Origin: Styela clava
Lineage: Eukaryota
Direction: 5' to 3'
DNA length: 64,000 bases
NCBI RefSeq assembly: GCF_964204865.1
Contig: NC_135252.1
Coordinates: 18,476,001-18,540,000, forward strand
Shown here: piece after piece, positions 5,777-64,000 of the stretch
Layout: every line of letters starts with the position of its first letter
Numbering within the stretch: the first letter of the stretch is position 1
The notes under the pieces: model-generated
Told to the model about the DNA's origin: nothing
Databases searched by the model: none
The model's input: the letters and a program-made list of their open reading frames with translations, nothing else
Made by a program: the position numbers and the translations under genes

Positions 5777-7631
5777 ATGATATATCAATATATATCAATT
5801 TGTTCGTGTTACTTATTGCGTGTTCAAGTCACGGTAAGATGGTTTTAAAATATTTGACCTACTTGATGTAAATTAAATACTAAAATTTAATAAAAGTATG
5901 TATTTGTTTATCTGTCATAAAACAACTCAATTGTTTACACATAAAAGCTTTCACGTTATTACCCGAATTGAGTAATTTAAAAGGCCGGTTAGAACATTTG
6001 TTGTCTAGATAACGTAAATTAAACTACGGTTTAGACCAAATTGACAAACTTCATAATGTTATTCCTGTAAACAGCAAAAATATCGACAAACTCAGAAGAT
6101 CAGTATGATGGCATATCATACAATTTTGACTTGACGGTAAGTTGAATTACTTATGTTTTATTGTAGTTTTATGAGTACGATCACCGAAAATGCGTTAATA
6201 CTATTAACTTAGCATAGATGATTATTGCACAGATTGTATACACATTGAATAACAAATTTTCAGTAGCAATAAACCGCAAAATGTTATTTTTTGAATTTCT
6301 TACGTCGGTGTCAGCATTTAATATATATATAGGCTACATGTAGAATACGATCATTTGTGAAGTCGTAACACCTTGGGTGTTCGAGGAAATGTTGCATCTG
6401 TTGTTCATAATTTGGTAGTTTATTAACCTTGCTTTATTTTAATACAATTGATTGTTGAGCATATGTTTTGTTACTTCTCAAGTGACCCCTTTACAACACA
6501 GATAAAGTAATTTACGTTTTACTCTGTTTGTTTCAGTTCTCAAGTGAACAAGGTAAGATGTGTTTTTTATACTTATATTGATTTGTTTAACGGCCCCAGA
6601 ATCGGTTTTTATTTTGATTCAATTTGAAAGGATTTTTGAATAAGTATATATCTTAATCTCATTATGAGTAAACTAAAGCAGCTTAATTTATTCTACACCC
6701 GATTCAAGTTTTTTTTTTTAATTCAGATTTGCGAATGCAGTTGGAGGAAAAGCTTACATCAATTTTAATGAACATTTTTGATGGAGATCTTGTAATAAAC
6801 ACTCAAATATTTGAAAATGTCGAACGCTCCAACCTAATTCCAACAACAACAGATAGAGATGATACCACCGACAATAATGCTGTATATTCTAGTTCCCCGT
6901 CTCCTAATGATGTCATAACTAATCCGCTCTATTCAGCGACAAATGGAATACACGAGAAAGCTGCATTGAGTACAAGGACGGAAATTACGACAGGTTCAAT
7001 CAATTTTTTTTTGACGCTTATAAGCATACGTGTAGATCAGGCAATATCAAATACTCAAATTACATTAATATATATACACAGTGTAGAAGAGAAACAATTA
7101 TAATTTTGCAACTCTGAAATTTGCGAATATGAAAATTTGTTAAATATATCAAGAGTCTAACAAATTTCTATGCTATACCAAATTTTAATTGTTAATTCAA
7201 TATAGGTAAATCTAAGCAATTGATAAAGTATTTGAACTATAATGTCTGTAATATAATAAGAACACGTCATCTATCGATTCGATTACCAATCTATTTGATC
7301 CTATTTCAAGCACTAACGAAATATACTTGGGGATGGCCGCTTAGTACTGACCAATTGATAACAACCGACAAAGATGATATTGGACATAGAGTGACCACTG
7401 ACACGGATTCAACTCTTATTCAGTCTTTCCCTTTATCAACCTTCGTTGATAGGACTAGAGGAAGCTCACTTTCAGGTATCTGTAGGCTACCAGCAAAACA
7501 TTTCTGCCTTCCTCTTGATCACTAAAATAAATATCATGTTTATATCAATACCAGAATTACCCGAGGATTGCACAAACATGCACAAGAAAAACGCAAAAAT
7601 TAAAAACGATACCATTCCAAGCAAAAGTTGA
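5777..7631 (+). pseudogene. FReD gene type B copy 1, 3'-truncated in exon 6
   Basis: Exons homologous to B3 exons 1-6. An 8-nt duplication in exon 1 (atatcaat) frameshifts the signal peptide. Homology ends at ~7612 (KIKND|TIPSKS*) and exons 7-9 are absent. Confidence 0.85.
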
Positions 7632-42872: not shown

Positions 42873-43769
42873 CCTAACCTTTCATACACAATATTCTTAG
42901 TTTCTATCCGATGCATAATCCAGAAAATACATCACCTATATATCACAATAAAACACATGGTTTTCAACGAGCAAAAGAGTGGCCACGTCGATGAGAAATA
43001 AAACTTTTACATTCTAATTCATCAAGTGCCTCAAACTCAATACCGCCACTATTCTGAACCGAATTGATTTTTTAATTCCAATTGTGGTATAAATACGCTT
43101 GAGTGAATATTTCCCGCTACGACTCCGAGTTACATGGTATAAGTGCGTATTCACGTCTTGTACTTTGCTCACCCGAATAAAACTCTTCAATCCATTCACT
43201 AACAACTGACTGTAGGAACACTGGAAAGTCAATGGCTCAAATGAACAGATTGTTAAATTTATTGGACACGTAGTGGACATAACGATCGTTTTGTTGTTAT
43301 GTTGTTCTCAGTCTTGTTCTTGTTGTTGTGTGACACGTTTTGAAAAAATCGCCTTTCTCTTTGATTACTGGACCAATTGCTTTGAAATTTCCAGTGGGTA
43401 AAGATGGAATTTTTCTCCAAAGGGCTATTACTTTTTTTTTTGCTATGACGTCATCAAAATTATGTGGCTCTACGTGTCCATATATTTGAGCATAGCTCTC
43501 TTGTTTTAGATGAGGTGATATTATCTAAATCGTTATTTTGAGTTCGACATGTACGTAAGTAAATAAATGGAGCTTTAATTACGCATTAGAAATTGTAGAA
43601 ACAGAAGGTGAAGCGGAAATGTTATGAAGTGAAACAATGACGCATGCTGGGTTATGCGGTTCAAATTTTGATTAATATCACATTTTCGGTTTGACGAGTT
43701 AGTTTAGTTTGGATTTGTTTATCAGTTATTCAGTAAAAAGCTACAAGACTGTAGTTCAAAACAAGAAAC

Positions 43770-46700
43770 ATGATGTGTAATTCTTTGTTCCTGTTGCTTA
43801 TTGCGGGATCAAGTCTCGGTGAGAAAGTTTTAAAATAAATGACCCTACTTAGTGTAAATTAAAGACTAAAAATTATTAAAATTATGTATTTGTTTATTTC
43901 TCATAAAACAAATTCATTATTAACATATAAAAGCTTTCACGATATCACACGAATTGAGAATGTCGCCAAATTAACGAACAACGCATGCCGATTGGAACAT
44001 GTTTCGTCTAAATAACATAACCTAGTCCTAAGCTATGGCTTAGTCAAAATTAATAAACTTCATAATGTTACTCCTATACACAGCAAAAATATCGCCAAAC
44101 TCAGAAGATACCTGTGATGACATATCACACAATTTTGACTTGACGGTAAGTTAAATTATTTATGTATTGTTGCAATTTTATAAATACAATCACCAAAACG
44201 CGTGTAAATACTATTAACCTAGCAAAAATCATTCTTGCGCAGATAATATACACATTGAATAACAAATTATCAGCGGCATTAAACCTCAAAATGTTATTTC
44301 TCGAATTTCATATGTCGATGTATGAATTCAAGGAAATGTTGCATTTGTTGTAAATAATTTGTAGTATACTATTCTTGCTCTAATTTTATACAATTGATTG
44401 TTTAGCATATTTTTTCTTACTTCTTAAAAAACCCTTCACAAAAATGTGAAGTAAAGTGTGTTTCATTCTGTTTGTTTCAGTTAACCAGCGAACAAGGTAA
44501 GATGTGACTTTTATTACAATATTGATTGGTTTAACGGTCCCAGAATCTTTATTTGGATTCAATTTGAGAGAATCTTTGAATAAATATATATATCAATCTC
44601 ATTAGTTTTACATGTTCAAAATCTTCGTACACCAACAGACACACTAAGTATTGGTAAGCTAAAGCAACTTAAATCTATACCAGATTCAGAAATACATCAG
44701 AAGGTTTGTTAATTCAGATTTGCGAATGCAGTTGGAAGAAAAGCTTACATTATTGTTAATGAATAATTTTGACGGAGATCTTGTAATAAACACTCAAATA
44801 TTTGAAAATGTTGCACGCACCAACCTAAATCATACAACTACAGATAGAGATGATACCACCGACAATAATGTTGAATATTCTAGTTCCGCGTCTTCTAATG
44901 ATGTCACAACTGATCCGTTTTATTCAAGGACAAATTTGATAACAGAGAAAACTGAATTGAGTACAAAGAAGGAAATTACGACAGGTTTTAATAATTTTTC
45001 TTCATATTTTCAACGTAAATGTAGATCAAGCTACACCAACAACTCGAATTGCAATGCATTATGTATACACAGTGTAGAAGGGAACCAATAAAAATATTGC
45101 AATGACAAAAATTTGAAAAAAAAAACTCTTCAAATATGTATGAAATTATGGAAGTGTATGATCGCAAAACCCAACAAATTTGTATTCTAGTCAAAATTAT
45201 AATTATTACTCAATTCTTATGGTAGTAGCTTATACAATTGAGGTAGTTTAGTCATTTGGTAAGGTATTTAAACTATAATGTCCGTAATATAATACGAACG
45301 CGTCATCTATCGATTTCATTACATTCAATTATTGAACCTAATTGACCTCATTTCAGGCACTTACGAAATATACCGACTGGGAATGGCCGAGAAGTACCGA
45401 CAAATTGATAACAACCGACAAAGATGATATTGGAGATGTGGTGACCACTGACACGGATTCAACTCTTCTTCAGTCTTCTACTTTAACTACTCTCGTTGAT
45501 AGGAATGAAGGAAGCTCACATTCAGGTATCGGTACTAGCAGAAGATTTCTGTCTTCCTCTTGATCATTATATTTACAACGTATAGTTAATATTATGTAAT
45601 AATATTATGTTTTATATCAATATCAGATTTACCCGAGGATTGTACAAACATGCAAAAGAAAAACGCGAAAACTAAAAACGCTACTGGTGGAGTATTTAAT
45701 ATTTATCCTGAACCAAACGAAAGTTCCATTGAAGTTTATTGTGATCTCGTCACCGAATGAGGAGGATGGATTGTAAGCTTTGCATTTTGAACAAAGCTAG
45801 TATAAGCTGATTAAAAATTATCCCTTGTATCAATTTTCAATATTCACTAATCACTCCACTCTCATGAGTGAAAATTTTATAAATCTGCACGGATACGTAA
45901 ATTTGACAAAATTTTTGTAACATTTCGTTGTGAATCAATCATTGAATAATATAAGAACAACAGCAAACTTGATTTCAAAGGTGTTTCAACGACGAATGGA
46001 TGGATCGGAAAATTTTTATAGAAATTATTCTGACTACGTGAAGGGGTTTGGAAAAGCCGATAGAGAAATGTGGCTTGGTAAGTTTATTTACTTTTAATAT
46101 TGTTGGAATATTTGCAATGTAACAATTTTGAATGAAGTTGCGATAAGAAAATGTCAAAAAAATTTAATATTGATCAAAATGTGCAACTCGGTTGGTTTAC
46201 TTGCCCAATTCTAAATCCAGAAGTCATAAAATTAAATATTTCCATATTAAATCTTTGAAATTGTATAAAATCATTCAAGTTAACATAAAAACGAGAATAT
46301 CGGTTGGAAACCGAAGACTTATCGATCGATAGTTAGGGGATCCCCCAAAACAGAAACTGCAGTTTCGATTCATCCGCTCTTGTAACTTGCGCACTGCGCA
46401 TCGCACACACACACTCGGCGGGTTTCAAAATTCTCTCGCTTTACAAAAATCTAGATCACTATATCAATAATTGATTGATAACTCGCTAATTATACGACAT
46501 AATTCGCCCAAAATCAATAGGCTACTGGTCCGAGATAAGATGAATGCACATGCAAAATCTGGAGCAGATTCAATCTCGCTTTCGTGAGATATCGCGTGCA
46601 TCTAACAGACAGACATACATACAGACATACATACAGACAGACATACATACAGACAAATACCTATCAATATACTTACCGATCTTAAGATCGATAAGTAATT

Positions 46701-47779
46701 AAGCACCAATACCATGTATAATGATACCTCATTTGCGCCAATATAAACTTCAGGTCTGGAAACGTTGAATCTGATTACGAATAAATATGATTGTGAACTT
46801 CGTATAGATATGAAAGATTGGGAAAACAACACATCTTACGCCAAATATGGGTGAGTCGCGTGATAAAAAAATAAAAAGCCAATGAATTACACATAGCTTA
46901 TAAATGTGGGTTGGACTTTGAAAGGCCAATCTGTCACCCTATTTAGGAAAGTCGCCATTGACTTCAAGTTTTAGTGTTATTTGAGCACGCACTCGGGAAG
47001 AAATGCTAGAGCAATGGAAGTTGGCTATTATATAATTTCTTTATTAAACTTGGCATCTTGGAATTGTTGTGAATTCGGAATAGCTTTTTCTAATATTCAA
47101 AATATTTCATATTGATTGAATGAAACTACATAAGCTACAATAATGCGGATAAAAACACTCGAAATAAGATAGAAACGTACCAGACTACTGTAATATTACT
47201 AGTACAAACAAAAAATAAATGGGACCTCCTGAAGTATGCGCACCAAGATGGCGCACAATCTGAACTCGGGTTGTGTACAAAGTTAGGTTTCAGGCTGTGC
47301 GACATCTTTGTGCGCATACTTCAGGAGTACCAAATAATGATATACGTTTGACTGCTGTTGATAAATAGTCAAGAAACGAATCTCAAAACCCCTCAGACAT
47401 ACTGTAGAGACGCAGTTGAAGGACAGAAACATGAATAACGCTCTAAATTTCTAGGGTGTTTAAAGTTGGAGATGAAACTAACAAATATCAACTCACTGTG
47501 GGGGAATACAGTGGAAATGCGGGAGATTCAATGCGAAATCATTCTACAATGAACTTCACAACAAAAGATTACGACAACGATATCTGGCAAAGAAATTGCG
47601 CTCAACGATTCAGAGGCGGTTGGTGGTACAATAAATGCCATCAATCTAACCCAAACGGCATTTACTTATCAGGAGAATCTGAGTTTGGCGTTGGAATCAG
47701 CTGGTTTACCTGGAAAACGCACAGATACTCCCTCAAATTTATTGAGCTGAAACTCAGGAAAAAATCTAAAACTATATGA
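43770..47779 (+). pseudogene. FReD gene type A copy 3 (mosaic of A2-like 5' and A1-like 3')
   Basis: 9 exons, TGA at 45758-45760, shifted exon-5 acceptor, and intron-7 HINE as in A1. Confidence 0.88.
46292..46698 (-). mobile_element. HINE/DINE-like element, copy in A3
   Basis: Essentially identical to 2589-2995. Confidence 0.75.
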
Positions 47780-49497: not shown

Positions 49498-52400
49498 ATG
49501 ATATATCAATATTTGTTCGTGTTACTTATTGCGTGTTCAAGTCACGGTAAGATGGTTTTAAAATATTTGACCTACTTGATGTAAATTAAATACTAAAATT
49601 TAATAAAAGTATGTATTTGTTTATCTGTCATAAAACAACTCAATTGTTGACATATAAAAGCTTTCACGTTATTACCCGAATTGAGTAATTTAAAAGCCGG
49701 TTAGAACATTTGTTGTCTAGATAACGTATATTAACTACGGTTTAGTCCAAATTGACAAACTTCATAATGTTATTCCTGTAAACAGCAAAAATATCGACAA
49801 ACTCAGAAGATCAGTATGATGGCATATCATACAATTTTGACTTTACGGTAAGTTGAATTACTTATGTTTTATTGTAGTTTTATGAGTACGATCACCGAAA
49901 AATGCGTTAATACTATTAACTTAGCATAGATGATTATCGCACAGATTATATACACATTGAATAACAAATTTTCAGTAGCAATAAACCGCAAAATGTTATT
50001 TTTTGAATTTCTTACGTCGGTGTCAGCATTTAATATATATATAGGCTACATGTAGAACACGATCATTTGTGAAGTCTTAACACCGTGGTTGTTCATGTAA
50101 AAGTTGCATCTGTTGTTTATAATTTTGTAGTATATTAACTTTGCTTCAATTTTATACAATTGATTGTTGAGCATATTTTTTGTTACTTCTCAAGTGACCC
50201 CTTCATAACACAGATGAATAAATTTACGTTTTACATTGTTTGTTTCAGTTCTCAAGTGAACAAGGTAAGATGTGTTTTTTATTCTTATATTGATTTGTTT
50301 AACGGCCCCAGAATCGGTTTTATTTTGATTCAATTTAAAAGGATTTTTGAATAAGTATATATCTTAATCTCATTATGAGTAAACTAAAGCAGTTCAATTT
50401 ATTCTACACCAGATTCAAGGTTTTTTTTAATACAGATTTGCGAATGCAGTTGGAGAAAAAGCCTACATCAATTCTATTGAACATTTTTGATGGTAATCTT
50501 GTAATAAACACTCAAATATTTGAAAATGTCGAACGGTCCAACCTAAATCCAACAACAACAGATAGAGATGATACCACCGACAATAATGCTGTATATTCTA
50601 GTTCCTCGTCTCCTAATGATGTCATAACTAATCCGCTCTATTCAGCGGCAAATGGAATACATGAGAAAGCTGCATTGAGTACAAGGACGGAAATTACGAC
50701 AGGTTCAATCAATTTTTTTGACTCCTATAAGCATACGTGTAGATCAGGCAATATCAAATACTCAAATTACATTAATATACACAGTGTAGAAGAGAAACAA
50801 TTATACTATTGCAACGCTAAAATTTGGGAATATGAAAATTTGTTAAATATATCATGAGTCTAACAAATTTCTATGCTATACCAAATTTTAATTGTTAATT
50901 CAATATAGGTAAATCTAAGCAATTGGTAAAGTATTTAAACTATAATATCTGTAATATAATAAGAACGCGTCATCTATCGATTCGATTAACAATCTATTTG
51001 ATCCTATTTCAAGCACTAACGAAATATACTTGGGGATGGCCGCTTAGTACTGACCAATTGATAACAACCGACAAAGATGATATTGGACATAGAGTGACCA
51101 CTGACACGGATTCAACTCTTCTTCAGTCTTCCACTTTATCAACCTTCGTTGATAGGACTAGAGGAAGCTCACATTCAGGTATATGTAGGCTACTAGCAGA
51201 ACATTTCTGCCTTCCTTTTGGTCATTAAAATAAATATTATGTTTATGTCAATACCAGATTTACCCGAGGATTGCACAAACATGCACAAGAAAAACGCAAA
51301 AATTAATAACGTTACTGGTGGAGTGTTTGAAATATATCCTGAACCAACTGAAAGTTCCATTAAAGTTTACTGTGATCTCGTCACCGACGGAGGAGGATGG
51401 ATTGTAAGCATTGTATTTTTGAACGAACCCAGTATAAGCTGATTAAAAAAACTATCATAAGCATCAACTTGCTATATTCACTACGCTCTCATGATTACAA
51501 ATTTTATAAATCTGCGCGGATACGTAAATTTGGCCTTTTTTTTGGTAACATTTCGTTTAGCTGAAAGGCTGAAACATTGAATAGTATGAGAATACCACAA
51601 AACTTGATTTCAAAGGTGTTTCAACGACGAATGGATGGATCGGAAAATTTTTATAGAAATTATTCTGACTACGAGAAAGGGTTTGGAAAAGCTGATAGAG
51701 AAATGTGGCTCGGTTAGTATATTTACTTTTAATATTGTTGGAATATTTGCAATGTAACAATTTTCCAAATAAATATCGTATACAGATTATCTCAAATAAA
51801 CGGCACATGAAGCTGTGATAACAAAAATGACAAGCAATGTTAATATTGATCAAAATTTGGTTTCAATTGGTTTACTTGCCTATTTCCAGATTCAGACGTC
51901 ATAAAACTAATTGTTTTCATATTAAATCTTTGAAATCGTAATAAAACATTTGAGTTAACTTAATCATGAAGCACTAATACCCACCCTTGTCCATGGGAAT
52001 AAGATTTCCATGGGAAACGTCTCTTGGGATGGGATGTGACAGCACACATTTGTATTTCACATGGGACACGTGGGTAATGAAATAACAGATGATTTTCGTG
52101 GAAACGATGGTAAAACATTTCGTTATGAATTTCGTGTCCATATATTTGAGCATAGCTTTCTTGATGGTTATAAAGAGCAAAATGTATTCAGCATTGCAAA
52201 TTCGTTTTATAAAGGGGCTAATGGACACGTGTATAATAGGTATAAACTTGAAGTTAACAAAGTCAGATAATTTGTTGTTTGCATGTCTCATCGTACATGT
52301 AGTCCTATTTAGTAGACGCTAAACTTAAATTTAACAATTTTATTGTTTTCCAATGCGAATCCCATGGGATGGGACAAGCATAGATTGTTATGGGATGGGA

Positions 52401-53377
52401 CAGAAAAAACTGTCCCATGGACAAGCCTGCTAATACCCTTATAACACTTTATTTGGTTTAATACATTGTTCAGGTCTAAAAACTTTAAATCTGATTACGA
52501 ACAAATATGATTGTGAACTTCGTATAGATATGAAAGATTGGAAAAACAACACAGCTTATGCCAGATATGGGTGAGTCGTGTGATAATAAAATTAAAAAAA
52601 ATCATTGTATTACATATACCTTATAGATGTCGGTTATCTGATACCATATTTGAAAAAGTTGACATTGACCAAAATTTCCATTGTTATTTGAATACACACT
52701 CGGGAATAAATGATAGAGCAATAGAAGTTGATTGCGTATTGAATGACTCGACATCCTTATTTCATGTAACAGGGTTGAAGTGGTGCAAATTCGAAATAGC
52801 TATTTCTAATATTTAAAATTATTCATATTGATTGCATAAAACTGTATATGATACACCAACTACAAACAGATGAGAAACTAAAAATAATATGGAAACGTAA
52901 CCAGACTATTGTGAACTTACAAAAATGAATACACATTTGACCACTGTTAATAAATAGACAAGTAAACGAATCTCGAAACCCTCAGTCAAACCTAAACTTT
53001 GTCTATAGAGACGCTGTTGAAAATTAGAAACATGAATTGCGCTCTGAATTTCCAGGTTGTTCAAAGTTGGAGATGAAACTACAAATTATCGGCTAACCAT
53101 TGGTGAATACAGCGGAAATGCTGGAGATTCATTGTCATATCATAATGCAATGAACTTTACAACTAAAGATTATGATAATGACATTGCCGCCAAAAATTGC
53201 GCTCAACGATATATTGGTGCTTGGTGGTACAGGAAATGCCACAGATCTAACCTTAACGGATTTTACTTTAGAGGAAATTCGTCATTTGGACAGGGAGTAA
53301 TCTGGTTTACTTGGAGGGGACAGTACTACTCTCTTAACTTTATTGAGATGAAACTAAGAAGAAAAGTTGAAGTGTAA
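49498..53377 (+). CDS. Intact secreted FReD/FREP lectin-like protein B3 (406 aa)
   Basis: Exons 49498-49546, 49786-49847, 50249-50264, 50436-50702, 51014-51178, 51258-51403, 51616-51712, 52474-52570 and 53056-53377 total 1221 nt with compatible phases and no stop. Architecture: signal peptide, S/T/D-rich stalk, complete FReD ([32 protein letters not shown]). Confidence 0.92.
51982..52429. mobile_element. hAT MITE in intron 7 of B3
   Basis: TIRs CACCCTTGTCCATGGGA / TCCCATGGACAAGCCTG, 8-bp TSD CTAATACC, and subterminal ATGGG repeats. Confidence 0.85.
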
Positions 53378-54117
53378 AACTAAATTTAAAATTGTACGTT
53401 TATTTGCAATATTGATATATCAAAAAGTTGATGAGTTTTTATTCGTAGTTTTCTCAATATTTTAAAATTTAATTTTATGGTATATTTGTGTTTGAATACA
53501 TTTTATATGGGGTTGTTAAAGAAAGCTCACTAACACTCATCAAATCTTTAATCTAAGTTGAAGGCCACGAGTCATAACCTTCCGGAATGAAAAAAAAAAT
53601 GGCGATCAGATTGGCGAATTTTAATACTATTATATATACAATTATTATATGAATGAATTTATTGGGCTATTTCTGGAGATGTTTTTTATGATTACTATAA
53701 CGCGAACTAAACTAAAAACACAATAGTTTCGTATTTTTTCCTGCACTGACGTCAGTGCGAACATTGATTAAGATTGAGAATCCTTCTTTGCATTTAAGCA
53801 AATGAATTGAGTTTTTCATTTATTTATTGCACTTTTTCCATTTTGATATTTTTTGAATGCCTGACCAGCATAATGACTTTATTGAACTACAATCATTGGC
53901 ATGTTGGTCAATAGATTGTTAGATTGATTTTATACTTGTATCGTTAAAATACTTTTATGGAAAATTATATGTTATTTAGAATGAATGTGCAAATTTATGA
54001 AACAGAACGCATTACAAGTGAACTTATTGAATATTGTTGTTACTTGAATTATTAACCCGAACCTATTGTTTTATCCGGTCATTTTTCGTGTGGTACGAAG
54101 AGACGGACGGAATCAAA

Positions 54118-54320
54118 TCAGTGGGTCGAGGACAGTAGATTAGGGATACTGAAAGTTTTGTAGAGGATAGTACGGATGATTGGGGGTGGGTCGAGGATAG
54201 AAAGTCAGAATGGGATAGGGCAGTGGGTTAAAGACTGGAACCTAGAGGGAGATTCAACGAACAATCGAGGATAGGAACCGAAACGATTGTAAAGGAAGTC
54301 GAGGATATGGAGGGACGGAG
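54118..54320. repeat. Degenerate copies of the minisatellite unit downstream of B3 (also ~62950-63075 after B4)
   Basis: GTGGGTCGAGGA and TCGAGGATAG cores. Confidence 0.6.
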
Positions 54321-54959
54321 GACACTACCCCATTCCTATGAATATTTGAACAAATATTGGAAATATATGAGTTAAAATATCAAATACAACACCTTATTAT
54401 ATCTTTGCATATAATAAACACCGACCTACCACAAGTGTATATTGCGTTTTAACTCACAAAACTGTCGACGTTACATTGTTTTGAATTCAGCAATAACAGA
54501 AATTTTGATTCTGATAAAAATTGACATTTGGTAATCACTTCGATCCAAATTTATGAGTATTGGAGAATTACAACTAAACGAGCTTTTTTTTAACGCGGAT
54601 GAACTTTTCGGAGAAACGAATTGTTTGTTTTAATTTTTCTTTAAATTCAAAGTTTAGTAGTTAAATAGTTCAAAACTTGGGGTTATGTGTTACAGTGTCC
54701 TTTATTAAAATTTGTTAAGCTCGGCAACCCCATGTATGTGTTTATGTACATAAGTATGGGATTTTTGTGTTAAGCCGTATAAACACGGTTAACTCACTCT
54801 ACATACCGTATGATGAAGATGCCATATGACCAGCATGACTGATAGCAACGTTCTAGAAAATTCAGGCGAAATGCTTACAGTATCTAGAATTGATGATATC
54901 TTGCTAAAATATGCCAAAAAGATTTGTTACAGAATGCAATTAGGACGATTAAACAGCTT

Positions 54960-55434
54960 ACAGCTTATGCCAAATATGGGTGAGTCGTATAATAATAATA
55001 TGAAAAAAATCATTGAATAACATATACTTATAGATGTCGGTAATCTTTTACCCTATTTTGGAAAGGCGACATTGACCAAAACTTTCAGTGTTATTTAAGT
55101 ACGCACTCGGGAATAAATGCTAGAGTAATAAAAGTTGATTGGTTATTGAATCATTTAGCATCCACATTCCATTTAACATATATATATATATGTAGGCTAA
55201 ATAGGCTACAATAAATGGATAGAAAACTCAATATAATATAGATTGCTGTTGATAAATAGTCAAAAAAAAGCGAATTTCAAAACCCATAGGCATAAAACTC
55301 TGACTGTAGAAACGCAGTTGAACGGCAGAAACCTGAATAACACTCTAAACTTCCAGGGTGTTCAAAGTTGGAGATGAAACTAACAAATATCAACTCACTG
55401 TGGGGGAATACAGTGGAAACGCATGAGATTCAAT
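54960..55434 (+). pseudogene. Fragment of an A-type FReD gene (end of exon 8, intron 8, start of exon 9)
   Basis: ACAGCTTATGCCAAATATGG|gtgagt, a homologous intron, then ccag|G GTG TTC AAA GTT GGA GAT GAA ACT AAC AAA... ending N-A-*-D-S at ~55432. Confidence 0.85.
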
Positions 55435-56814
55435 TAGTTTGAAAAATATTCATGATTATATTCGATGCTCTTCGGATTTTTTTATTATTTTTCGATAAAA
55501 AATTGGTAAATAGTACCTACTATATCTACTTATGCAGTCAAATCACACTGTATCACCAATACGAATATGTAATTTTTAATATTTTTCAATTTTTTGATTT
55601 ATTTATGTATGAAAAACTGCCAAAAATAAACTAGAAATTTCTAGAACGGCGCGTCCATCTGTTACCCATCCTGAAAAATCAGCCTAAATCAGTGGTTTTC
55701 AATCTCCTTTGTTGAATTCCTTCTCTTTCCTATTTTTGACTCTTTATTCCTTATTATATAAGCATAAAATTACTTTATTTCTTCAATCTTTAATAGATTC
55801 TTTGCTAGTGTAATGCCAAAGTCGCTCTCTCGTATAGTTTTTCATATGTTCATGAAAAAGTAAGTAATATATTAATAATAATAAAATATAGATATTAGTA
55901 ATACCACAGAGAATACAAAGCAAAATTTCTCTCTAAAAATGGCAAAATTCTTCCCTGGGGACAAATTTCTTCTTGGGTGCGGAATGCACTTGAGTATATA
56001 CCAGTTATTTTGTAAGCAGGCACATGAATATTTATACTGGAGCATTAGTGAATTTATTTCCACAAATTTAAATCAAATAAATAGGTTTTTCAGAGTTCAG
56101 AATGTAGGTAACAAAATACATTGGTATGGCGTTTGGAGTTGTAGCATCAAAAAGTGACGAGCTTGTTTGATATCTTCCATCAGTCATTCAATAACAAGTC
56201 TCAAGCTTGTAGATTTAAAATCAAGAACCTAAAACAATAGTTCTCAACCTTGTTGCCTAAATTTCCCCCCTTATCTTTTTGTACTCACTATGAATAAAAC
56301 TACCTTATTTATGCAATCTAACTTTGTTAATCATCTGTTATTTTCCAATGCATCGTTGCTAGTTAATATAAATTTGTTTTTAATCGATCCCTTGCTAGTT
56401 TTATGCTGAAGTTTCTCTCCCGTTGTGTACGTTTTTCATTCATCCATTGATATGAAGCAATATCAGTGGCCTAACAAGTAGCAAATTTTTGAGCTACCAT
56501 TTATGGTGATTGATTTCCAGTTGGGATTGCTGCCTGCATATAAATGGCCTGGCAATTGATGTAAATAAGTGACTTTCCAAGATTTTAAACATTTTTGTCA
56601 TCATATATATACGTTTGTTCCATATTCAAATATACCCATAATAATATGTCACGGATGCCGTCAACCTTATAAGCGAGTTTCTTCCACACACGCTTCAATC
56701 ATCTCATTGGCATACTGGATCCGTATAAAACCTGAGAGTACAAGGTTTGATTTGACGATCGCAGCGTGTGTGAAGCACATTTAGTTTCGCTACGTGGTAG
56801 AACGGGACGTTGGC

Positions 56815-57552
56815 TCGAGGGTAGGTGAGTTGAGGTAGATAGACAGTGGGTCGAGCGTAAAAAGGTGAGAGAGGTCGGACCGCGGGCCGGGGGTAAAAAG
56901 GTGGAGGGAGATAGGTAGGAAGGTCTCGAGTGTGACCACTTTAGAAGGGTTAGAGAGATAGCGCAGTGAGTCGAGGATTGGAAGGTTGAGGAAGATGGGG
57001 CAGTGGGTCTAGGATAGAGAGGTTGAGGGAGATAGGGCGGTGGGTCAAGGGTAGGTAGGTTGAGAGATAGGGCAGTGGGTCGAGGATAGTTAGGTTGAGG
57101 GAAATAGGGCAGTGGGTCGAGGATAGGTAGGTTGAGAGAGATAGGGCAGTGGGTCGTGGATAGGTAGGTTGAGGGAAATAGGGTAGTGGGTCGAGGATAG
57201 GTAGGTTGAGAGAGATAGGGCAGTGGGTCGAGGATAGGTAGGTTGAGGGAATAGGGCAGTGGGTCGAGGATAGGTAAGTTGAGGGAGATATGGCAGTGGG
57301 TCGAGGATAGATAGGTTGAGGGAATAGGGCAGTGGGTCGAGGATAGGCAAGTTGAGGGAGATATGGCAGTGGGTCGAGGATAGGTAGGTTGAGGGAATAG
57401 GGCAGTGGTCGAGGATAGGTAAGTTGAGGGAGATATGGCAGTGGGTCGAGGATAGAAAGGTTGGGGAGCTAGGGAAGTGGGTGGAGGACAAGAAGGTTGA
57501 AGGAAATGGAACAGGGGGTGTAGGATAGGAAGATTGAAGGAGATAGGCAGGG
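56815..57552. repeat. Expanded minisatellite upstream of B4 (~14 well-conserved 35-37 bp units plus degenerate flanks)
   Basis: Tandem GGGCAGTGGGTCGAGGATAGGTAGGTTGAGGGAGATA, with alternating 36/37-bp variants at ~57220-57440. Confidence 0.95.
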
Positions 57553-58363
57553 CAATTTTGTATCTCGCCTTCCTGTGTAAAAGGATGCACACCCCTGATT
57601 TAGCCTATATATTATAAAATACTAAAAATTTCGGAAGTCTGCATATAGACTGAACTAAGGGCAAGCCGCAGTAAACAGTCTGGCGGGCCACATGCGGGCC
57701 GTGGGTTGGGCAACCAATATATAGGGCTACAGCTCCTATGACCTATACCGAGCCGTAGTTGTTGCCGAATATAGGAGATTGAAAACATCGTCCTGAAAAC
57801 TTTGGTACCGGGATGCATGTATACGATCAATAACTTCTTACAAATTTGAAAATCTATTCATCCATAGTGAAACTAAAACACATTGCATATGAGACGTTGA
57901 TATAAACGTCAAAAATATTTGTTATGAATTTCAATGATCGAGTTGAGTTGTCGGTGTGTTTCCACAGCAACAATAGAATAATAGTTTGAAAATCTTTGGC
58001 GCTTAAATATTATACTGAGCTCAACAATGCCATGAACCTTCCAAAAATATAGAAAACTACTTCAATTTGAAATGGAAGTAAATTAAATAGTTGTCAAATT
58101 TATTTGGATTATCGGGAAATAGTTTTCGAAAAATTTTTTTGAGTACAACATGTACGTAAATAAATACATCGACAGTTCGAGAGTTGTATTAACAAAAGAT
58201 AAAGAGGAAATGTTATGACGTGCAATGATGACGCATGATGGGTTATGCGGTTCAAATATTAGTTGACATTTCATTTTCGGTTTGACGAGTTAGTTTAGTT
58301 TGATGTTTTCTATCTGTAAATCAGCAACAAAACTTCAAGCTTATAATTCAAAAAAGAAGAAAC

Positions 58364-61300
58364 ATGATATATCAATATTTGTTCGTGTTACTTATTACGG
58401 GATCAAGTCTCGGTAAGATGGTTGCATAAGATGCATAAGATGGACCTACTTGGTGTAAATTAAATACCAAAATTTTAATAAAAGTATGTATTTGTTTAAC
58501 TCTCATAAAACAACTCAATTGTTTACATATAAAAGCTTTCACGTTATCACCCGAATTGTGTAGTTACATGTCGCAATATTAGCGTACAACGCCGGTTAGA
58601 ACATTTTTTGTCTAGATAACGTAAATTAAACTACAGTTTAGTCCAAATTGACAAACTTTATAATGTTATTCCTGTAAACAGCAAAAATATCGACAGACTC
58701 AGAAGATCAGTATGATGGCATATCATACAATTTTGACTTGACGGTAAGTTGAATTACTTATGTTTTATTGTAGTTTTATGAGTACAATCACCGAGAAATG
58801 CGTTAATACTATTAACTTAGCATAGATGAATATCGCACAGATTATATACACATTGAATAACAAATTTTCAGTAGCAATAAACCGCAAAATGTTATTTTTT
58901 GAATTTCTTACGTCGGTGTCAGCATTTAATATATATATATATATATAGGCTACATGTAGAACACGATCATTTGTAAAGTCTTAACACCGTGGATGTTCAT
59001 GTAAAAGTAGCATCTGTTGTTTATAATTTTGTAGTATATTAACTTTGCTTCAATTTTATACAATTGATTGTTGAGCATATTTTTTGTTACTTCTCAGTGA
59101 CCCCTCCATAACACAGATGAATAAATTTACGTTTTACATTGTTTGTTTCAGTTCTCCAGTGAACAAGGTAAGATGTGTTTTTTATTCCTATATTGATTTG
59201 TTTAACGGCCCCAGAATCGGCTTTTATTTTGATTCAATTTAAAAGGATTATTGAATAAGTATATATCGTAATCTTATTATGAGTAAACTAAAGCAGTTTA
59301 ATTTATTCTACACCAGAATCAAGTTTTTTTAATACAGATTTGCGAATGCAGTTGGAGAAAAAGCTTACATCAATCCTTTTGAACATTTTTGATGGTAATC
59401 TTGTAATAAACACTCAAATATTTGAAAATGTCGAACGCTCCAACCTAAATCCAACAACAACAGATAGAGATGATACCACCGACAATAATGCTGTATATTC
59501 TAGTTCCCCGTCTCCTAATGATGTCATAACTAATCCGCTCTATTCAGCGGCAAATGGAATCAGGGGGAAAGCTGCATTGAGTACATGGACGGAAATTACG
59601 ACAGGTTCAATCATTTTTTTTGACTCCTATAAGCATAGGTGTAGATCAGGCAATATCACATACTCAAATTACATTAATATACACAGTGTAGAAGAGAAAC
59701 AATTATACTATTGCAACGCTAAAATTTGGGAATATGAAAATTTGTTAAATATATCATGAGTCTAACAAATTTCGATGCTATACCAAATTTTAATTGTTAA
59801 TTCAATATAGGTAAATCTAAGCAATTGGTAAAGTATTTGAACTATAATGTATGTAATATAATAAGAACGCGTCATCTATCGATTCGATTAACAATCTATT
59901 TGATCCTATTTCAAGCACTAACGAAATATACTTGGGGATGGCCGCTTAGTACTGACCAATTGATAACAACCGACAAAGATGATATTGGACATAGAGTGAC
60001 CACTGACACGGATTCAACTCTTCTTCAGTCTTTCACTTTATCAACCTTCGTTGATAGGACTAGAGGAAGCTCACATTCAGGTATCTGTAGGCTACTAGCA
60101 GACCATTTCTGCCTTCCTTTTGATCATTAAAATAAATATTATGTTTATGTCAATACCAGATTTACCCGAGGATTGCACAAACATGCACAAGAAAAACGCA
60201 AAAATTAATAACGTTACTGGTGGAGTGTTTGAAATATATCCTGAACCAACTGAAAGTTCCATTAAAGTTTACTGTGATCTCGTCACCGACGGAGGAGGAT
60301 GGATTGTAAGCATTGTATTTTTGAACGAACCAAGTATAAGCTGATTAAAAACCATCACAAGCATCAACTTGCTATATTCACTACGCTCTCATGATTACAA
60401 ATTTTATAAATCTGCGCGGATACGTAAATTTGGCCTTTTTTTGGTAACATTTCGTTGTAGCTGAAAGACTGAAACATTGAATAGTATGAGAATACCACAA
60501 AACTTGATTTCAAAGGTGTTTAAACGACGAATGGATGGATCGGAAAATTTTTATAGAAATTATTCTGACTACGTGAAGGGGTTTGGAAAAGCTGATAGAG
60601 AAATGTGGCTCGGTTAGTATATTTACTTTTAATATTGTTGGAATATTTGCAATGTAACAATTTTCCAAATAAATATCGTATACAGATTATCTCAAATAAA
60701 CGGCACATAAAGCTGTGAAAACAAAAATGTCAAGCAATGTTAATATTGATCAAAATTTGGTTTCAATTGGTTTAATTGCCTATTTCTAGATTCAGACGTC
60801 ATAAAACTAATTGTTTTCATATTAAATCTTTGAAATCGTATTAAAACATTTAAGTTAACTTAATCATGAAGCACTAATACCCACCCTTGTCCATGGGAAT
60901 AAGATTTCCATGGGAAACGTCCCTTGGGATGGGATGTGACAGCACACATTTGTATTTCACATGGGACACGTGGGTCATGAAATAACAGATGATTTTCGTG
61001 GAAACGATGGTAAAACATTTCGTTATGAATTTCGTGTCCATATATTTGAGCATAGCTTTCTTGATGGTTATATAGAGCAAAATGTATTCAGCATTAAAAA
61101 TTCGTTTAATAAGGGGGCTGATGAGCACGTGTATAATAGGTATAAACTTGAAGTTAACAAAGTCAGATAATTTGTTGTTTGCATGTCTCATCGTACATGT
61201 AGTCCTATTTAGTAGACGCTAAACTTAAATTTAACAATTTTATTGTTTTCCAATGCGAATCCCATGGGATTGGACAAGCATAGATTGTTATGGGATGGGA

Positions 61301-62259
61301 CAGAAAAAACTGTCCCATAGACAAGCCTGCTAATACTCTTATAACACTTTATTTGGTTTAATACATTGTTCAGGTCTAAAAACTTTAAATCTGATTACGA
61401 ACAAATATGATTGTGAACTTCGTGTAGATATGAAAGATTGGAAAAACAACACAGCTTATGCCAGATATGGGTGAGTCGTGTGATAATAAAATTAAAAAAA
61501 ATCATTGTATGACATATACCTTATAGATGTCGGTTATCTGATACCATATTTGAAAAAGTTGACATTGACCAAAATTTCCATTGTTATTTGAATACACACT
61601 CGGGAAAAAATGATAGAACAATAGAAGTTGATTGCGTATTAAATGACTTGACGTCCTTATTTCATGTAACAGGGTTGAAGTGGTGCAAATTCGAAATAGC
61701 TATTTCTAATATTTAAAATTATTCATATTGATTGCATAAAACTGTATATGATACACCAACTACAAACAGACGAGAAGGCTAAAAATAATATAGAAACGTA
61801 ACCAGACTACTGTGAACTAATTTGTACAAAAAACAATACACGTTTGACCCCTGTTAATGGATAGTCAAGAAAACTAATTCCAAAACCCTCAGGCATATCT
61901 TAACTTTGAGTGTAGAAAAACAGTTGAAAATTTTCAGGTTGTTTAAAGTTGGAGATGAAACTACAAATTATCGCCTTACCATTGGTGAATATAGCGGAAA
62001 TGCTGGAGATTCATTGTCACCTAATAATGCTATGAACTTCACAACTAAAGATTATGATAATGATATTTGGCCTTTTAATTGCGCTCAACGATATACTGGC
62101 GCTTGGTGGTTCAGGAAATGTCATAACTCTCACCTCAACGGAGTTTACTATAGAGGAAATTCGACATATGCAGAGGGAATTATCTGGCGTACTTGGCGGG
62201 GATACTACTATTCTCTTAAATTTATTGAGATGAAACTAAGAAGAAAATTTAAAGTTTGA
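58364..62259 (+). CDS. Intact secreted FReD/FREP lectin-like protein B4 (406 aa)
   Basis: Exons 58364-58412, 58682-58743, 59152-59167, 59338-59604, 59916-60080, 60160-60305, 60516-60612, 61374-61470 and 61938-62259 form an open frame. VFKRR replaces VFQRR. Confidence 0.92.
60882..61329. mobile_element. hAT MITE in intron 7 of B4
   Basis: Same element and site as 51982-52429, with TSD CTAATACC/CTAATACT. Confidence 0.85.
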
Positions 62260-64000
62260 AACTAAATTTAAAATTGTACGTCTATTTGAAACGTTAATGA
62301 ATCAAAAGATTGATAATTTTTTTTTCGTAGCTTTCTCAATATTTTAAAAGGTAACTCTATTTATATATTGGGTTTGTATCTATTTTATATGGGGTTGTTA
62401 TATACTAACACTCATCAAATATTTCATTTCAGTTGCAGTTTTAATTCATAACTATTCGGAATTGAAAAAAAGCTGAAAATTAGAAGTTTTAATACATTAT
62501 ACTATATACATTTATGATAAAATTGAATTTATTTAGTTATATCTTGAGATGTTATATATGTGTACTATGAGGCGAACAAAATATGCGAAAAATTCAATAT
62601 TTTTATTTTTTTCATTTGCTCTGACAGATCAAGATTGAGAAGTAAATTGAGGTTTACATTTATTTATTTCACCTTTTTCGTTTTGATATTTTTTGAATAC
62701 ATGATCAGCATATTTACTTTATGGAACTACTATCATTGACATATTGGTCAATAAATTATGTTATGTTGATTTTAATCTTTTATCGTTAAAATCCCGCTAT
62801 AGAAAATGATATGTTATTTAGAAAGAATGAGCAAAAGTATAAATTAAAATGTATTGCAAATCAACTTTCTGGATATTGTTGTTACATGAATTATCAACTC
62901 GAAAGTATTGTTTCATCCAATCAATTTATTTGTTGTACGAGGCGACTGACGGAGATAGGGAATAGGTGGACGGTAGGATGGGACAGTGGATCGAAGACTG
63001 GAAACTACAGGGAGATTAAACCAGAGTCGAGGATAGAAAACTGAAAAGATTGTAAAATGATTCCGGGATATGGAGAACAGAGGGCAGTACTCAATTCCTA
63101 TATAAATAATTGAACAAATATAAGATATATGTTAAAATACCAAGACCGACATAAAACTTTATCTTCAGATATAATGAACACCGATTCACCGCAGATGTGT
63201 ATATGGCATCGTAACTCGAAAAAATTGAAGGTTGTTTTGAATTCAGCAATAACAAAAATTTTGATTAGGATAAAATTTAAACATTTGGAAATAACCCAGA
63301 TCCCAATTTGTGAATATTGTAAATGGCTTCTTTTTTTACGCGGATGGCCTCTTCAAATAAACAAATTGTGTGTTTTAATTATTATACAAATTCATAATTC
63401 AGCAGTTAATTAATTAAAAACCCTGGGGATATGTGTCACGGTGTCTTTTATTCAAATTTGTTAAATTCGGCAACCCCATGTATGGGTTTACTTACATAAG
63501 TTTCAGATTTTTGTTCAAATATTTTGAAACCCATCATTAAAACCGAATGATGAAAATGGTATATCATCTTGAGCATGCATGCTAGCAATGTTCTAGAATA
63601 TTCAGGTTATCCAGGCGAAATGGCCCTAATTAGAACTGATATTTTGCTAATGTATACCAAACAAATAGTGACAGAACGCAATTGGGGCGATTAAACAAAT
63701 GACAATGACGCTTTTTTATAGTAAATCGTTTTAATAAGTTGCGTTATGCATTGGTAAATTCATTTATTTAAAAAATCAAAACATTTACTTACAAAGGAGG
63801 ACTTACAAAACACGTAATGATACAGCTGTACGTTAATTATAATAATATGACGAAGAGAACATGTGTTGAATGAGCATACAAATTGAATTTATTCAAAGAC
63901 AAAAAACTTCGATTGGTCAAAATATAGATCAGTAACTTAGTTATATCAATTCTCCTATCTGCATGTATAAACAAGAGAGCGATGCTCAAATATATGAACA

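What the first reader, a model, noticed from the sequence alone, without database searches (positions are those of the whole stretch)
53056..62259. Constant-body / variable-head FReD receptors: B3 and B4 differ mainly in the ligand-binding exon 9
Seen: exons 6-8 differ at 3 of ~113 residues, and intron 7 and its MITE are nearly identical. Exon 9 differs at 21 of 106 residues, none in its first 27: YH/PN, DIAAK/DIWPF, CHRSN/CHNSH, SFGQ/TYAE, WFTWRGQ/WRTWRGY. Identity drops abruptly in late intron 8 (~52850 versus ~61790) and stays low through the 3' flank. Established: in ficolins, tachylectin-5 and FIBCD1 this region is the P subdomain, holding the Ca2+ loop and the Cys-His acetyl-binding pocket. 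Inference: recombination or conversion homogenises the 5' scaffold while old, distinct specificity exons are kept or swapped as cassettes, giving a germline-diversified pattern-recognition array.
Basis: partly seen in the sequence, partly recalled or inferred. Interest (0 to 1): 0.8.

Follow-up and report, generated by a model that had tools for sequence, protein, structure and literature searches.

The report
Partly homogenised tandem fibrinogen-domain lectin genes
Two neighbouring secreted fibrinogen-domain lectin genes of a sea-squirt-like genome were made almost identical over about 3 kb by recombination between the copies, but kept old, different last exons that line the sugar-binding pocket; this is a clear example of a known process, not a new diversity-generating system.

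Summary
B3 and B4 differ at 2.4% of aligned bases up to a change-point in intron 8 (B3 52867-52926, B4 about 61767-61833) and at 19% beyond it. Exons 6-8 differ at 3 of 114 residues and exon 9 at 21 of 106, none in the first 27.

Silent sites show the same split (dS 0.015 against 0.32). Exon 9 has dN/dS 0.37, so it is older, not faster-evolving.

B3 is a three-part mosaic. It matches the B1 relic up to about 49936 and B4 from there to about 52900, and is old beyond that. Nowhere in the 377-Mb assembly is there a closer copy of either 3' module, so the heads were kept in place, not swapped as cassettes.

An older A-versus-B layer stops at the same place (dS 0.2 against 0.9). Several other FReD clusters show the same polarity and one shows the reverse. 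The effect follows loss of 3'-flank homology.

Mapped on FIBCD1, B4 has the canonical acetyl pocket, while B3 is changed at three of five pocket positions.

Verdict: interlocus gene conversion or unequal crossover in a tandem lectin array, with likely functional divergence of the heads. Selection for this pattern is unproven. Earlier notes of this scan flag similar sharp-edged tracts elsewhere in this genome.

The parts
49498..53377 (+). Gene B3, a secreted FReD protein with nine exons. Exon 1 (signal peptide) starts at 49498. Exon 2 ends at 49847. Exon 3 is a micro-exon at about 50249-50264. Exons 4-9 are about 50436-50702, 51014-51178, 51258-51403, 51616-51712, 52474-52570 and 53056-53377.
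   Evidence: Exon boundaries were transferred from the RNA-supported B4 model through the pairwise alignment. The frame is open across exons 4-9. The signal-peptide ORF and exon 2 were found by conservation between the A and B genes. RNA-type contigs carry B3-specific letters in exons 4 and 5.
58364..62442 (+). Gene B4, with the same nine-exon structure. Exon 1 starts at 58364. Exon 2 ends at 58743. The micro-exon is 59152-59167. The remaining exons are 59338-59604, 59916-60080, 60160-60305, 60516-60612, 61374-61470 and 61938-62259 (stop codon), followed by a 3' UTR to about 62442.
   Evidence: Spliced contigs of runs X5 and X6 give GT..AG joints at every intron from exon 4 to exon 9. Other contigs cover B4's own exon 9 with 2 mismatches or fewer per 343 nt. 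The loose 5' end of one contig matches the exon 2 end and the B4 form of the micro-exon.
52867..52926 (.). 3' edge of the B3/B4 high-identity tract, in intron 8 (the B4 equivalent is about 61767-61833).
   Evidence: Maximum-likelihood change-point: mismatch 2.4% to the left against 19.4% to the right, 2dlnL = 286. See also the alignment.
49934..49938 (.). 5' edge of the B3/B4 tract, in intron 2. Upstream of it B3 matches the B1 relic at 99-100% and B4 is the odd one out.
   Evidence: Maximum chi-square on three-way site patterns. Left of the point there are 170 sites with B1=B3 and 14 with B3=B4. Right of it there are 22 and 59. Fisher P = 4e-27.
53056..53377 (+). B3 exon 9 (P subdomain). The pocket is non-canonical: Phe77, Gly78 and Gln89 stand at the FIBCD1 Tyr431, Ala432 and Trp443 positions.
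   Evidence: Pfam Fibrinogen_C positions 112-219. Alignment to FIBCD1 chain 4m7f together with the residue roles in PMC3908420.
61938..62259 (+). B4 exon 9 (P subdomain). The acetyl pocket is canonical: Tyr52, Cys61-His62, Tyr77, Ala78 and Tyr89.
   Evidence: The exon is transcribed.
53378..54955 (.). Old 3' flank of B3, homologous to the B4 flank 62260-63697 at 72-73% identity.
54960..56414 (+). Relic of the 3' end of an A-type gene lying between B3 and B4. It holds the end of exon 8, part of intron 8, the first 34 codons of exon 9 and an A2-like 3' flank.
   Evidence: tblastn fragment at 55358-55459 and blastn matches.
60914..61240 (.).
   Evidence: Very high contig depth. At least 891 candidate copies genome-wide at about 80% identity, while the B3 and B4 copies are 97% alike. 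Only weak 11-nt inverted ends were found.
43706..47779 (+). Gene A3, the paralog with the same exon structure, used as the older comparison.
   Evidence: For A against B, dS is 0.19-0.25 in exons 6-8 and 0.83-0.97 in exon 9.
6121..7613 (+). B1, a 5' relic with B-type exons 2-5 and the first 20 codons of exon 6, where it is cut off. The twin relic B2 is at 28890-30382.

Best explanation
B3 and B4 are old tandem duplicates of a secreted fibrinogen-domain lectin gene. Their silent and flanking divergence is about 0.25-0.35.

Later non-allelic homologous recombination between the copies (gene conversion, or unequal crossover followed by conversion) overwrote about 3 kb, from intron 2 (about 49936) to late intron 8 (about 52900). 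This left exons 3-8 nearly identical. Exon 9 and the 3' flank were never overwritten and keep the old divergence.

An even more recent event made the region upstream of 49936 in B3 a copy of the A1-B1 unit.

The tract edge before exon 9 is most simply mechanical. Conversion needs good homology on both sides of the tract, and the segment from exon 9 onward lies at or beyond the edge of usable homology.

The outcome is two expressed or expressible proteins with one stalk and one N-terminal half of the FReD, but different binding pockets. B4 is canonical for acetyl groups. B3 is altered at three pocket positions and in the Ca2+ loop.

Shown here: the mosaic, its edges, the age difference, the absence of donor copies and the residue mapping. 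Inferred: the direction and order of the events, the mechanical cause of the edge and the difference in ligand.
For: - The change-point in intron 8 has 2dlnL = 286.
- For B3 against B4, dS is 0.015 in exons 6-8 and 0.32 in exon 9. Exon 9 has dN/dS 0.37, and there are 4 silent differences even in its 27 invariant first residues.
- The 3' flank is 16-30% diverged over 1.6 kb.
- A second edge lies at 49934-49938, where B3 switches from B1-like to B4-like (P = 4e-27).
- No closer copy of either 3' module exists in the assembly.
- Debris of other unequal exchanges lies in the same array: the psi relic that begins at the exon 8/intron 8 border, the B1 and B2 relics cut in exon 6, and the frameshifted C1 and C2.
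- The same layering is seen for A against B, with dS 0.19-0.25 against 0.83-0.97. There the homology ends right after the stop codon.
- Across 56 paralog pairs from other clusters, the ratio of exon-9 dS to exon 7-8 dS is about 2 where the 3' flank is no longer alignable and about 0.8 where it is (Spearman 0.42, P = 0.001).
Against: - Two nested events in this array (A against B, and B3 against B4) both stop just before exon 9. So do events in at least three other clusters. That recurrence could also mean that selection removes conversions which homogenise the head.
- The differences are enriched at ligand-site positions (P = 0.006) and at family-wide hypervariable positions (P = 6e-5).
- The surveyed pairs are not independent, and the link with 3'-flank divergence does not tell cause from effect.
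- Neither the donor nor the direction of the B3/B4 tract could be resolved.
- Transcription of B3's own exon 9 was not shown.
Confidence: 0.75

Rival explanations
1. A divergence island kept by selection. Conversion tracts do reach exon 9, but copies whose heads are homogenised lose a distinct ligand specificity and are removed. The boundary in intron 8 is therefore kept by diversifying or balancing selection on the P subdomain. On this reading the array works as a germline repertoire of heads on a shared body, which is the reader's idea without the cassette swapping.
For: - Edges before exon 9 recur in the A/B and B3/B4 comparisons and in the C19, C10 and C6:8.8 Mb clusters.
- 7 of the 14 FIBCD1 ligand or Ca2+-loop positions differ, against 14 of 92 other positions.
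- The differences sit at the family's most variable positions.
- Exon-9 dN exceeds exon 7-8 dN in 53 of 56 pairs.
- B4 has a canonical pocket and B3 an altered one.
Against: - dN/dS for exon 9 is 0.37, and dN and dS rise together.
- The non-coding 3' flank is as old as exon 9.
- The polarity is reversed in cluster C6:23.2 Mb, where the 3' flank is still homologous.
- No population or functional data are available.
Confidence: 0.3
2. A chimeric origin through one unequal crossover or a partial duplication, without any conversion. A young copy of exons 1-8 was placed in front of the exon 9 of an older, now partly deleted paralog.
For: The array holds headless 5' relics (B1, B2) and a bodyless 3' relic (psi) that begins at the exon 8/intron 8 border. 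Breaks in this part of the gene therefore do occur.
Against: - The high-identity tract has two edges (about 49936 and about 52900). Older homologous sequence lies on both sides, in the same order and spacing in both copies. This fits replacement in place rather than a junction of unrelated segments.
- The segment between 49938 and 51315 is patchy, with 22 sites of one pattern against 59 of the other.
Confidence: 0.15
3. Same age throughout, with exon 9 simply evolving faster through positive selection or relaxed constraint.
For: Exon 9 is the most variable part of the domain across the family.
Against: - Silent sites in exon 9 are about 20 times more diverged than in exons 6-8.
- The late part of intron 8 and 1.6 kb of non-coding flank are equally diverged.
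- dN/dS is 0.37.
Confidence: 0.02
4. An assembly artefact, with B3 and B4 being two haplotypes of one gene laid side by side.
For: Contig depth in DNA run X1 is roughly twice as high over the shared 5' part as over the B4-specific 3' part. This fits either two true copies or two collapsed alleles.
Against: - The 3' flanks differ by 16-30% over 1.6 kb.
- The upstream contexts differ: A3 lies before B3, while the psi relic and a 16-copy minisatellite lie before B4.
- B3's upstream region equals B1, not B4.
- This is far beyond allelic divergence.
Confidence: 0.03

Closest known systems
Partial interlocus gene conversion in tandem innate-immune receptor paralogs, for example mammalian TLR1/TLR6 (PMC2077338)
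   Same: Tandem paralogs. A sharply bounded region is kept nearly identical by conversion, while the rest, which includes ligand-contacting parts, stays diverged. The same region is affected in repeated events.
   Different: In TLR1/TLR6 the converted part is C-terminal (late LRRs, the transmembrane segment and TIR), and independence across nine species was shown. Here the converted part is N-terminal plus the first half of the binding domain, only one genome was examined, and independence of the events is only partly shown.
FIBCD1, tachylectin-5A and ficolin-type FReD acetyl-binding lectins (PMC3908420; PDB 4m7f, 1jc9, 2j3g)
   Same: Exon 9 aligns to FIBCD1 at E = 2e-33. The Ca2+ ligands Asp393 and Asp395, the Cys401-Cys414 disulfide and the Cys-His pair are all conserved. 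B4 also has the Tyr405, Tyr431 and Ala432 equivalents, and a Tyr at the Trp443 position, as in TL5A and the ficolins.
   Different: - There is no collagen-like region, so these are not ficolins.
- There is no N-terminal transmembrane segment, unlike FIBCD1. Instead there is a signal peptide followed by an acidic Ser/Thr-rich stalk of about 170 residues with no Pfam domain.
- B3 has Phe, Gly and Gln at three pocket positions.
Biomphalaria glabrata FREPs (PMC7588048)
   Same: A large FReD gene family in an invertebrate, in which gene conversion is invoked as a source of variant sequences.
   Different: FREPs carry IgSF domains, and their diversification is reported to be somatic, from germline source genes. 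Here there is no IgSF domain, the mosaic is in the germline assembly, and somatic variation was not examined.
Islands of divergence persisting under gene conversion (for example the copepod GOT1 paralogs, PMC3728101)
   Same: Converted paralogs that retain a diverged segment, which may mark a region under selection for a distinct function.
   Different: Here the diverged segment runs on into the non-coding flank, and its dN/dS is below 1. Selection is therefore not needed to explain it.

Membership tests
Fibrinogen-related domain (Pfam PF00147 Fibrinogen_C) | Profile match over the whole domain of about 220 residues | tested here: met
   Searched exon by exon. Exon 6 covers profile positions 2-44, exon 7 covers 45-77, exon 8 covers 78-110 and exon 9 covers 112-219, with E-values from 1e-4 to 3e-33.
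Fibrinogen-related domain (Pfam PF00147 Fibrinogen_C) | P-subdomain Ca2+ ligands (two Asp) and the disulfide followed by Cys-His | tested here: met
   Asp40, Asp42, Cys48 and Cys61-His62 are present in both B3 and B4. Asp40, Asp42, Cys48 and Cys61 are invariant in 40 distinct exon-9 peptides of this genome; His62 is replaced by Tyr or Phe in a few of them.
Ficolin | N-terminal collagen-like Gly-X-Y region | tested here: not met
   The exon 1-5 translations show a signal peptide and an acidic Ser/Thr-rich stretch without Gly-X-Y repeats. Pfam finds no domain in exons 4 and 5.
TL5A/FIBCD1-type acetyl-binding S1 pocket | The FIBCD1 residues Tyr405, His415, Tyr431 and Ala432, and an aromatic residue at position 443 | tested here: inconclusive
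   By sequence alignment only. B4 has all five (Y, H, Y, A, Y). B3 has two of five (Y and H, then F, G, Q). No structure or binding assay was done.
Interlocus gene conversion / non-allelic homologous recombination mosaic | A sharply bounded high-identity tract with older homologous sequence on both sides | tested here: met
   The edges are at about 49936 and about 52900. Divergence is 2.4% inside the tract, 5-15% upstream of it (B3 against B4) and 16-30% downstream.
Interlocus gene conversion / non-allelic homologous recombination mosaic | A silent-site age difference between segments of one gene | tested here: met
   dS is 0.015 against 0.32 (P = 4e-5) for B3/B4, and 0.25 against 0.97 (P = 1e-4) for A3/B3.
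Interlocus gene conversion / non-allelic homologous recombination mosaic | Identified donor and direction | tested here: inconclusive
   B1 and B2 serve as outgroup only up to 51315. Between 49938 and 51315, B3 and B4 share the state 59 times against 22, but which copy was overwritten cannot be told.
Cassette-swapping diversity system (donor library copied into an expression site) | Additional donor copies of the variable module elsewhere in the genome | tested here: not met
   Whole-assembly searches were run with both 3' modules as DNA and with exon 9 as protein. The best non-self hit is always the other B gene, followed by the A genes at 63-66% protein identity, with every other locus at 60% or below.
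Positively selected recognition exon | dN/dS above 1 | tested here: not met
   Exon 9 of B3 against B4 has dN/dS 0.37, and 0.42 outside the first 28 codons. Site-wise tests are not possible with two sequences.
Biomphalaria-type FREP | IgSF domain(s) upstream of the FReD | tested here: not met
   Pfam finds no domain in the N-terminal exons.

The most novel reading that the evidence does not exclude
In this tunicate-like genome, FReD arrays are run as modular germline repertoires. Recurrent conversion keeps the signal peptide, the stalk and the A/B subdomains uniform. Selection protects exon 9, the pocket exon, from homogenisation. Many old heads therefore persist on a few shared bodies, and the boundary in intron 8, with its conserved 130-nt block, is a maintained feature rather than a chance tract end.
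Probability: 0.22. Interest if true: 0.6.

Novelty: new member of a known kind. Interest (0 to 1): 0.4.

Why it matters
It gives a well-resolved case, base by base and with RNA support for the exons, of how a large invertebrate-chordate lectin family is shaped. Unequal exchange and conversion constantly reshuffle and homogenise gene bodies, while the exon that lines the sugar pocket can stay old and distinct.

It offers a simple, testable pair. B4 has a canonical acetyl pocket and B3 has three pocket changes on an otherwise identical protein. This is close to a natural domain-swap experiment for FReD specificity.

It also warns that gene trees built from whole FReD genes in such arrays mix segments of very different ages.

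Tried and rejected
- Cassette import from elsewhere was rejected. Whole-assembly searches with both 3' modules and with exon 9 found no closer copy.
- Faster evolution of exon 9 at equal age was rejected by the silent-site and flank divergence.
- Type II membrane receptor (FIBCD1-like topology) was considered because earlier notes mention such FReD genes in this genome. It was rejected for A and B, because exon 1 encodes a short hydrophobic signal-peptide-like start ([17 protein letters not shown]) and no later hydrophobic segment is present. No signal-peptide predictor was available.
- B1 and B2 as functional 'B body plus C head' chimeras are unlikely. Exon 6 is cut after codon 20 and runs into stop codons, and exon 9 of C1 and C2 has lost the conserved C-terminal strand through a frameshift.
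- The MITE label was not confirmed. No inverted repeats of 14 nt or longer were found, only weak 11-nt ends. The element is a dispersed repeat.
- No repeat or other special sequence was seen at the intron 8 change-point.
I did not try to get round it.
Exons were searched one by one. They were concatenated only inside a local script, to check frame continuity and count substitutions, and only per-exon translations were printed.

Full report
SETTING

The window is G000:C3:18476001-18540000 of a 377-Mb assembly that holds at least 150 FReD terminal exons. Earlier notes of this scan name the genome as the ascidian Styela clava. I did not verify that. The assembly size and the reported ficolin expansion are compatible with it (PMC7540406).

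The window carries seven FReD terminal exons plus one fragment, inside a patchwork of segmental repeats:
- A unit of about 22.8 kb is present twice. It holds an A gene, a B-type 5' relic, a C-type FReD and a hydrolase-like gene.
- A third, partial unit follows with A3, B3, a 3' relic (psi, 54960-56414) and B4.

No further member of this subfamily lies outside the window.

GENE MODEL

Contigs of two RNA-type runs laid on B4 give GT..AG joints for every intron from exon 4 to exon 9. They also cover B4's own exon 9 and a 3' UTR to about 62442. The loose 5' end of one contig matches the end of an upstream exon (58743) and a 14-16 nt micro-exon (59152-59167).

A short hydrophobic ORF that is conserved between the A and B genes supplies the start codon and a signal-peptide-like sequence.

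The frame is open across exons 4-9 in both genes. Exons 6-9 make one Fibrinogen_C domain, with exon 9 covering profile positions 112-219. Exons 4-5 are an acidic Ser/Thr-rich stretch without any Pfam domain and without collagen repeats. These are secreted FReD lectin-like proteins, not ficolins in the strict sense.

The spliced contigs carry B3-specific letters in exons 4 and 5, so B3 is probably transcribed too. Its own exon 9 was not tested.

THE OBSERVATION

It is correct in every number.
- B3 and B4 are 93-100% identical per 100 columns up to 52889/61790 and 62-91% identical after that.
- The maximum-likelihood change-point is at B3 52867-52926, with 2.4% mismatch before it and 19.4% after it (2dlnL = 286). 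That is 130-190 bp before exon 9.
- Exons 6-8 differ at 3 of 114 residues. Exon 9 differs at 21 of 106, with none in the first 27.
- Low identity continues through 1.6 kb of homologous 3' flank.

OLD OR FAST?

Silent divergence (dS) is 0.015 in exons 6-8 and 0.32 in exon 9, and exon 9 has dN/dS 0.37. The 27 invariant first residues of exon 9 still carry four silent differences, giving dS 0.25. The non-coding flank is 16-30% diverged.

In other paralog pairs of this genome that are uniformly diverged, exon-9 dS is about equal to the non-coding divergence, so the two measures can be compared. The head is therefore older, not faster-evolving.

THE BODY IS ITSELF A MOSAIC

Three-way site patterns switch at B3 49934-49938. 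Upstream there are 170 sites with B1=B3 against 14 with B3=B4. Downstream there are 22 against 59 (P = 4e-27; sliding identities).

B3 therefore has three parts:
- It is B1-like (99-100%) up to intron 2.
- It is B4-like (about 98%) from there to late intron 8.
- It is old beyond that.

The B3/B4 tract is thus about 3 kb long with two edges. Homologous sequence continues on both sides. That is the signature of conversion, or of a double exchange, and not of a junction between unrelated pieces.

NO CASSETTE DONORS

Whole-assembly searches were run with the B3 module (52930-54950), with the B4 module (61835-63700) and with the exon 9 protein. In each case the other B gene is the best non-self hit (76% and 72% DNA, 79% protein). 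The A genes come next at 63-66% protein identity, and every other locus is at 60% or below. The tree shape is the same for body and head. Only the depth differs.

IS THE BOUNDARY RECURRENT?

Yes, in part.
- A against B shows the same layering: dS 0.19-0.25 in exons 6-8 against 0.83-0.97 in exon 9 (P = 1e-4). Here the A/B homology ends immediately after the stop codon.
- In a survey of 50 FReD loci from other clusters, exon-9 dS is 2-7 times the exon 7-8 dS in the C19, C10 and C6:8.8 Mb clusters.
- The cluster at C6:23.2 Mb shows the reverse (exons 7-8 at 0.15-0.30, exon 9 at 0.05-0.14).
- The cluster at C13 is mostly uniform, with one pair also reversed.

The ratio follows the state of the 3' flank. 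Its median is about 2 where the flank is no longer alignable and about 0.8 where it still is (Spearman 0.42, P = 0.001; the pairs are not independent).

A mechanical limit would predict exactly this: conversion needs homology on both sides, so the last exon at the edge of the duplicated segment escapes. I state the general rule from my own knowledge of conversion in duplicated segments. The same pattern is also what one old block of exon 9 plus flank would look like, so it does not exclude selection.

FUNCTIONAL READING OF THE DIFFERENCES

Exon 9 aligns to FIBCD1 (4m7f) at E = 2e-33, without ambiguity around the pocket. I used the residue roles given for FIBCD1 in PMC3908420.

Conserved in both genes: the Ca2+ ligands Asp393 and Asp395, Cys401-Cys414, His415 and Tyr405.

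Different between B3 and B4:

| FIBCD1 position | Role | B3 / B4 |
|---|---|---|
| Lys381 | TL5A Arg186 position | Y / P |
| Ser397 | Ca2+ loop | A / W |
| Glu398 | Ca2+ loop | A / P |
| Asn399 | Ca2+ loop | K / F |
| Tyr431 | pocket | F / Y |
| Ala432 | pocket | G / A |
| Trp443 | pocket | Q / Y |

That is 7 of 14 listed site positions against 14 of 92 others (hypergeometric P = 0.006).

B4 therefore has the full canonical acetyl pocket. B3 shares Phe-Gly with the A genes, which have His where B3 has Gln at position 89.

The differing positions are also the most variable ones across 40 distinct exon-9 peptides of this genome (2.13 against 1.14 bits, P = 6e-5). Derived changes are split about evenly between the two lineages. 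A difference in ligand preference is likely, but it is inferred from sequence only.

COMPARISON WITH WHAT IS KNOWN

Sharply bounded conversion that keeps one part of tandem immune-receptor paralogs uniform, while other domains stay diverged, is documented for TLR1/TLR6 (PMC2077338). The idea of divergence islands under conversion is also established (PMC3728101). Gene conversion is invoked for snail FREPs, but there it is somatic and the proteins carry IgSF domains (PMC7588048).

I found no paper describing this for ascidian FReD genes, though the library is limited. Other first-reader notes of this scan flag sharp-edged conversion tracts in several unrelated gene families of this same genome. 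These notes are unverified, but they suggest the process is common here and not special to FReD genes.

VERDICT

It is wrong about cassette swapping, and unproven about a selected 'constant body, variable head' design.

This is a new, well-resolved member of a known kind of event. It has a useful by-product: a natural pair of lectins that differ almost only in the pocket exon.

LIMITS

- Only one assembly was examined.
- B3 exon 9 expression was not shown.
- Pocket mapping is by sequence only.

Noticed in passing
G000:C6:23137428-23317084 (loci L028, L034-L040): In this FReD cluster exon 9 has dN at or above dS (for example L036/L038 with dS 0.049 and dN 0.113). The mosaic polarity is also reversed: exons 7-8 are older (dS 0.15-0.30) than exon 9 (0.05-0.14) and its 3' flank (3-9%). 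This is a better candidate for positive selection on the pocket exon than B3/B4.
   Followed up: partly
G000:C19:5.34-6.01 Mb (L007-L012, L019): At least seven copies of an identical or nearly identical FReD exon 9, with flanks 99-100% alike, at a spacing of about 100 kb. This is either a very young large tandem amplification or an assembly repeat.
   Followed up: no
window 54960-56414: A bodyless relic between B3 and B4. It holds the end of exon 8, part of intron 8, the first 34 codons of an A-like exon 9, and then A2-type 3' flank.
   Followed up: partly
window 6121-7613 and 28890-30382; 9386-12545 and 32159-35318: Headless B-type 5' relics (B1, B2) are cut after codon 20 of exon 6. Each is followed by a C19-type FReD (C1, C2) whose exon 9 has lost the conserved C-terminal strand through a frameshift, and which has no N-terminal exons of its own detectable.
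   Followed up: partly
window 56948-57547 (and 48400-48488): A 37-bp minisatellite with 16 copies lies upstream of B4, against about two 46-bp copies at the matching place upstream of B3. It produces long spurious Pro/Ser/Thr-rich ORFs on the minus strand.
   Followed up: partly
window 52925-53055, 61830-61937, 47325-47455, 55240-55357: The last ~130 nt of intron 8 are conserved between A3, the psi relic, B3 and B4 (about 80%), although exon-9 silent sites of A against B are near saturation. This may be a constrained intronic element or a small old conversion patch.
   Followed up: no
window 59152-59167 (B4), 50249-50264 (B3), 6537-6552, 29309-29324: A 14-16 nt micro-exon (encoding FSSEQ) between exon 2 and the large stalk exon. 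It is supported by the loose end of an RNA-type contig.
   Followed up: partly
loci L020, L025, L033, L047, L049: Several FReD copies in other clusters have stop codons in exon 7, 8 or 9, so they are probably pseudogenes.
   Followed up: no
window 58687-58743 (B4 exon 2) and 49791-49847 (B3): Exon 2 encodes an acidic stretch with two tyrosines ([14 protein letters not shown]), partly conserved in the A genes. Because it follows a signal peptide it would be extracellular, so it is not a cytoplasmic Tyr signalling motif.
   Followed up: no
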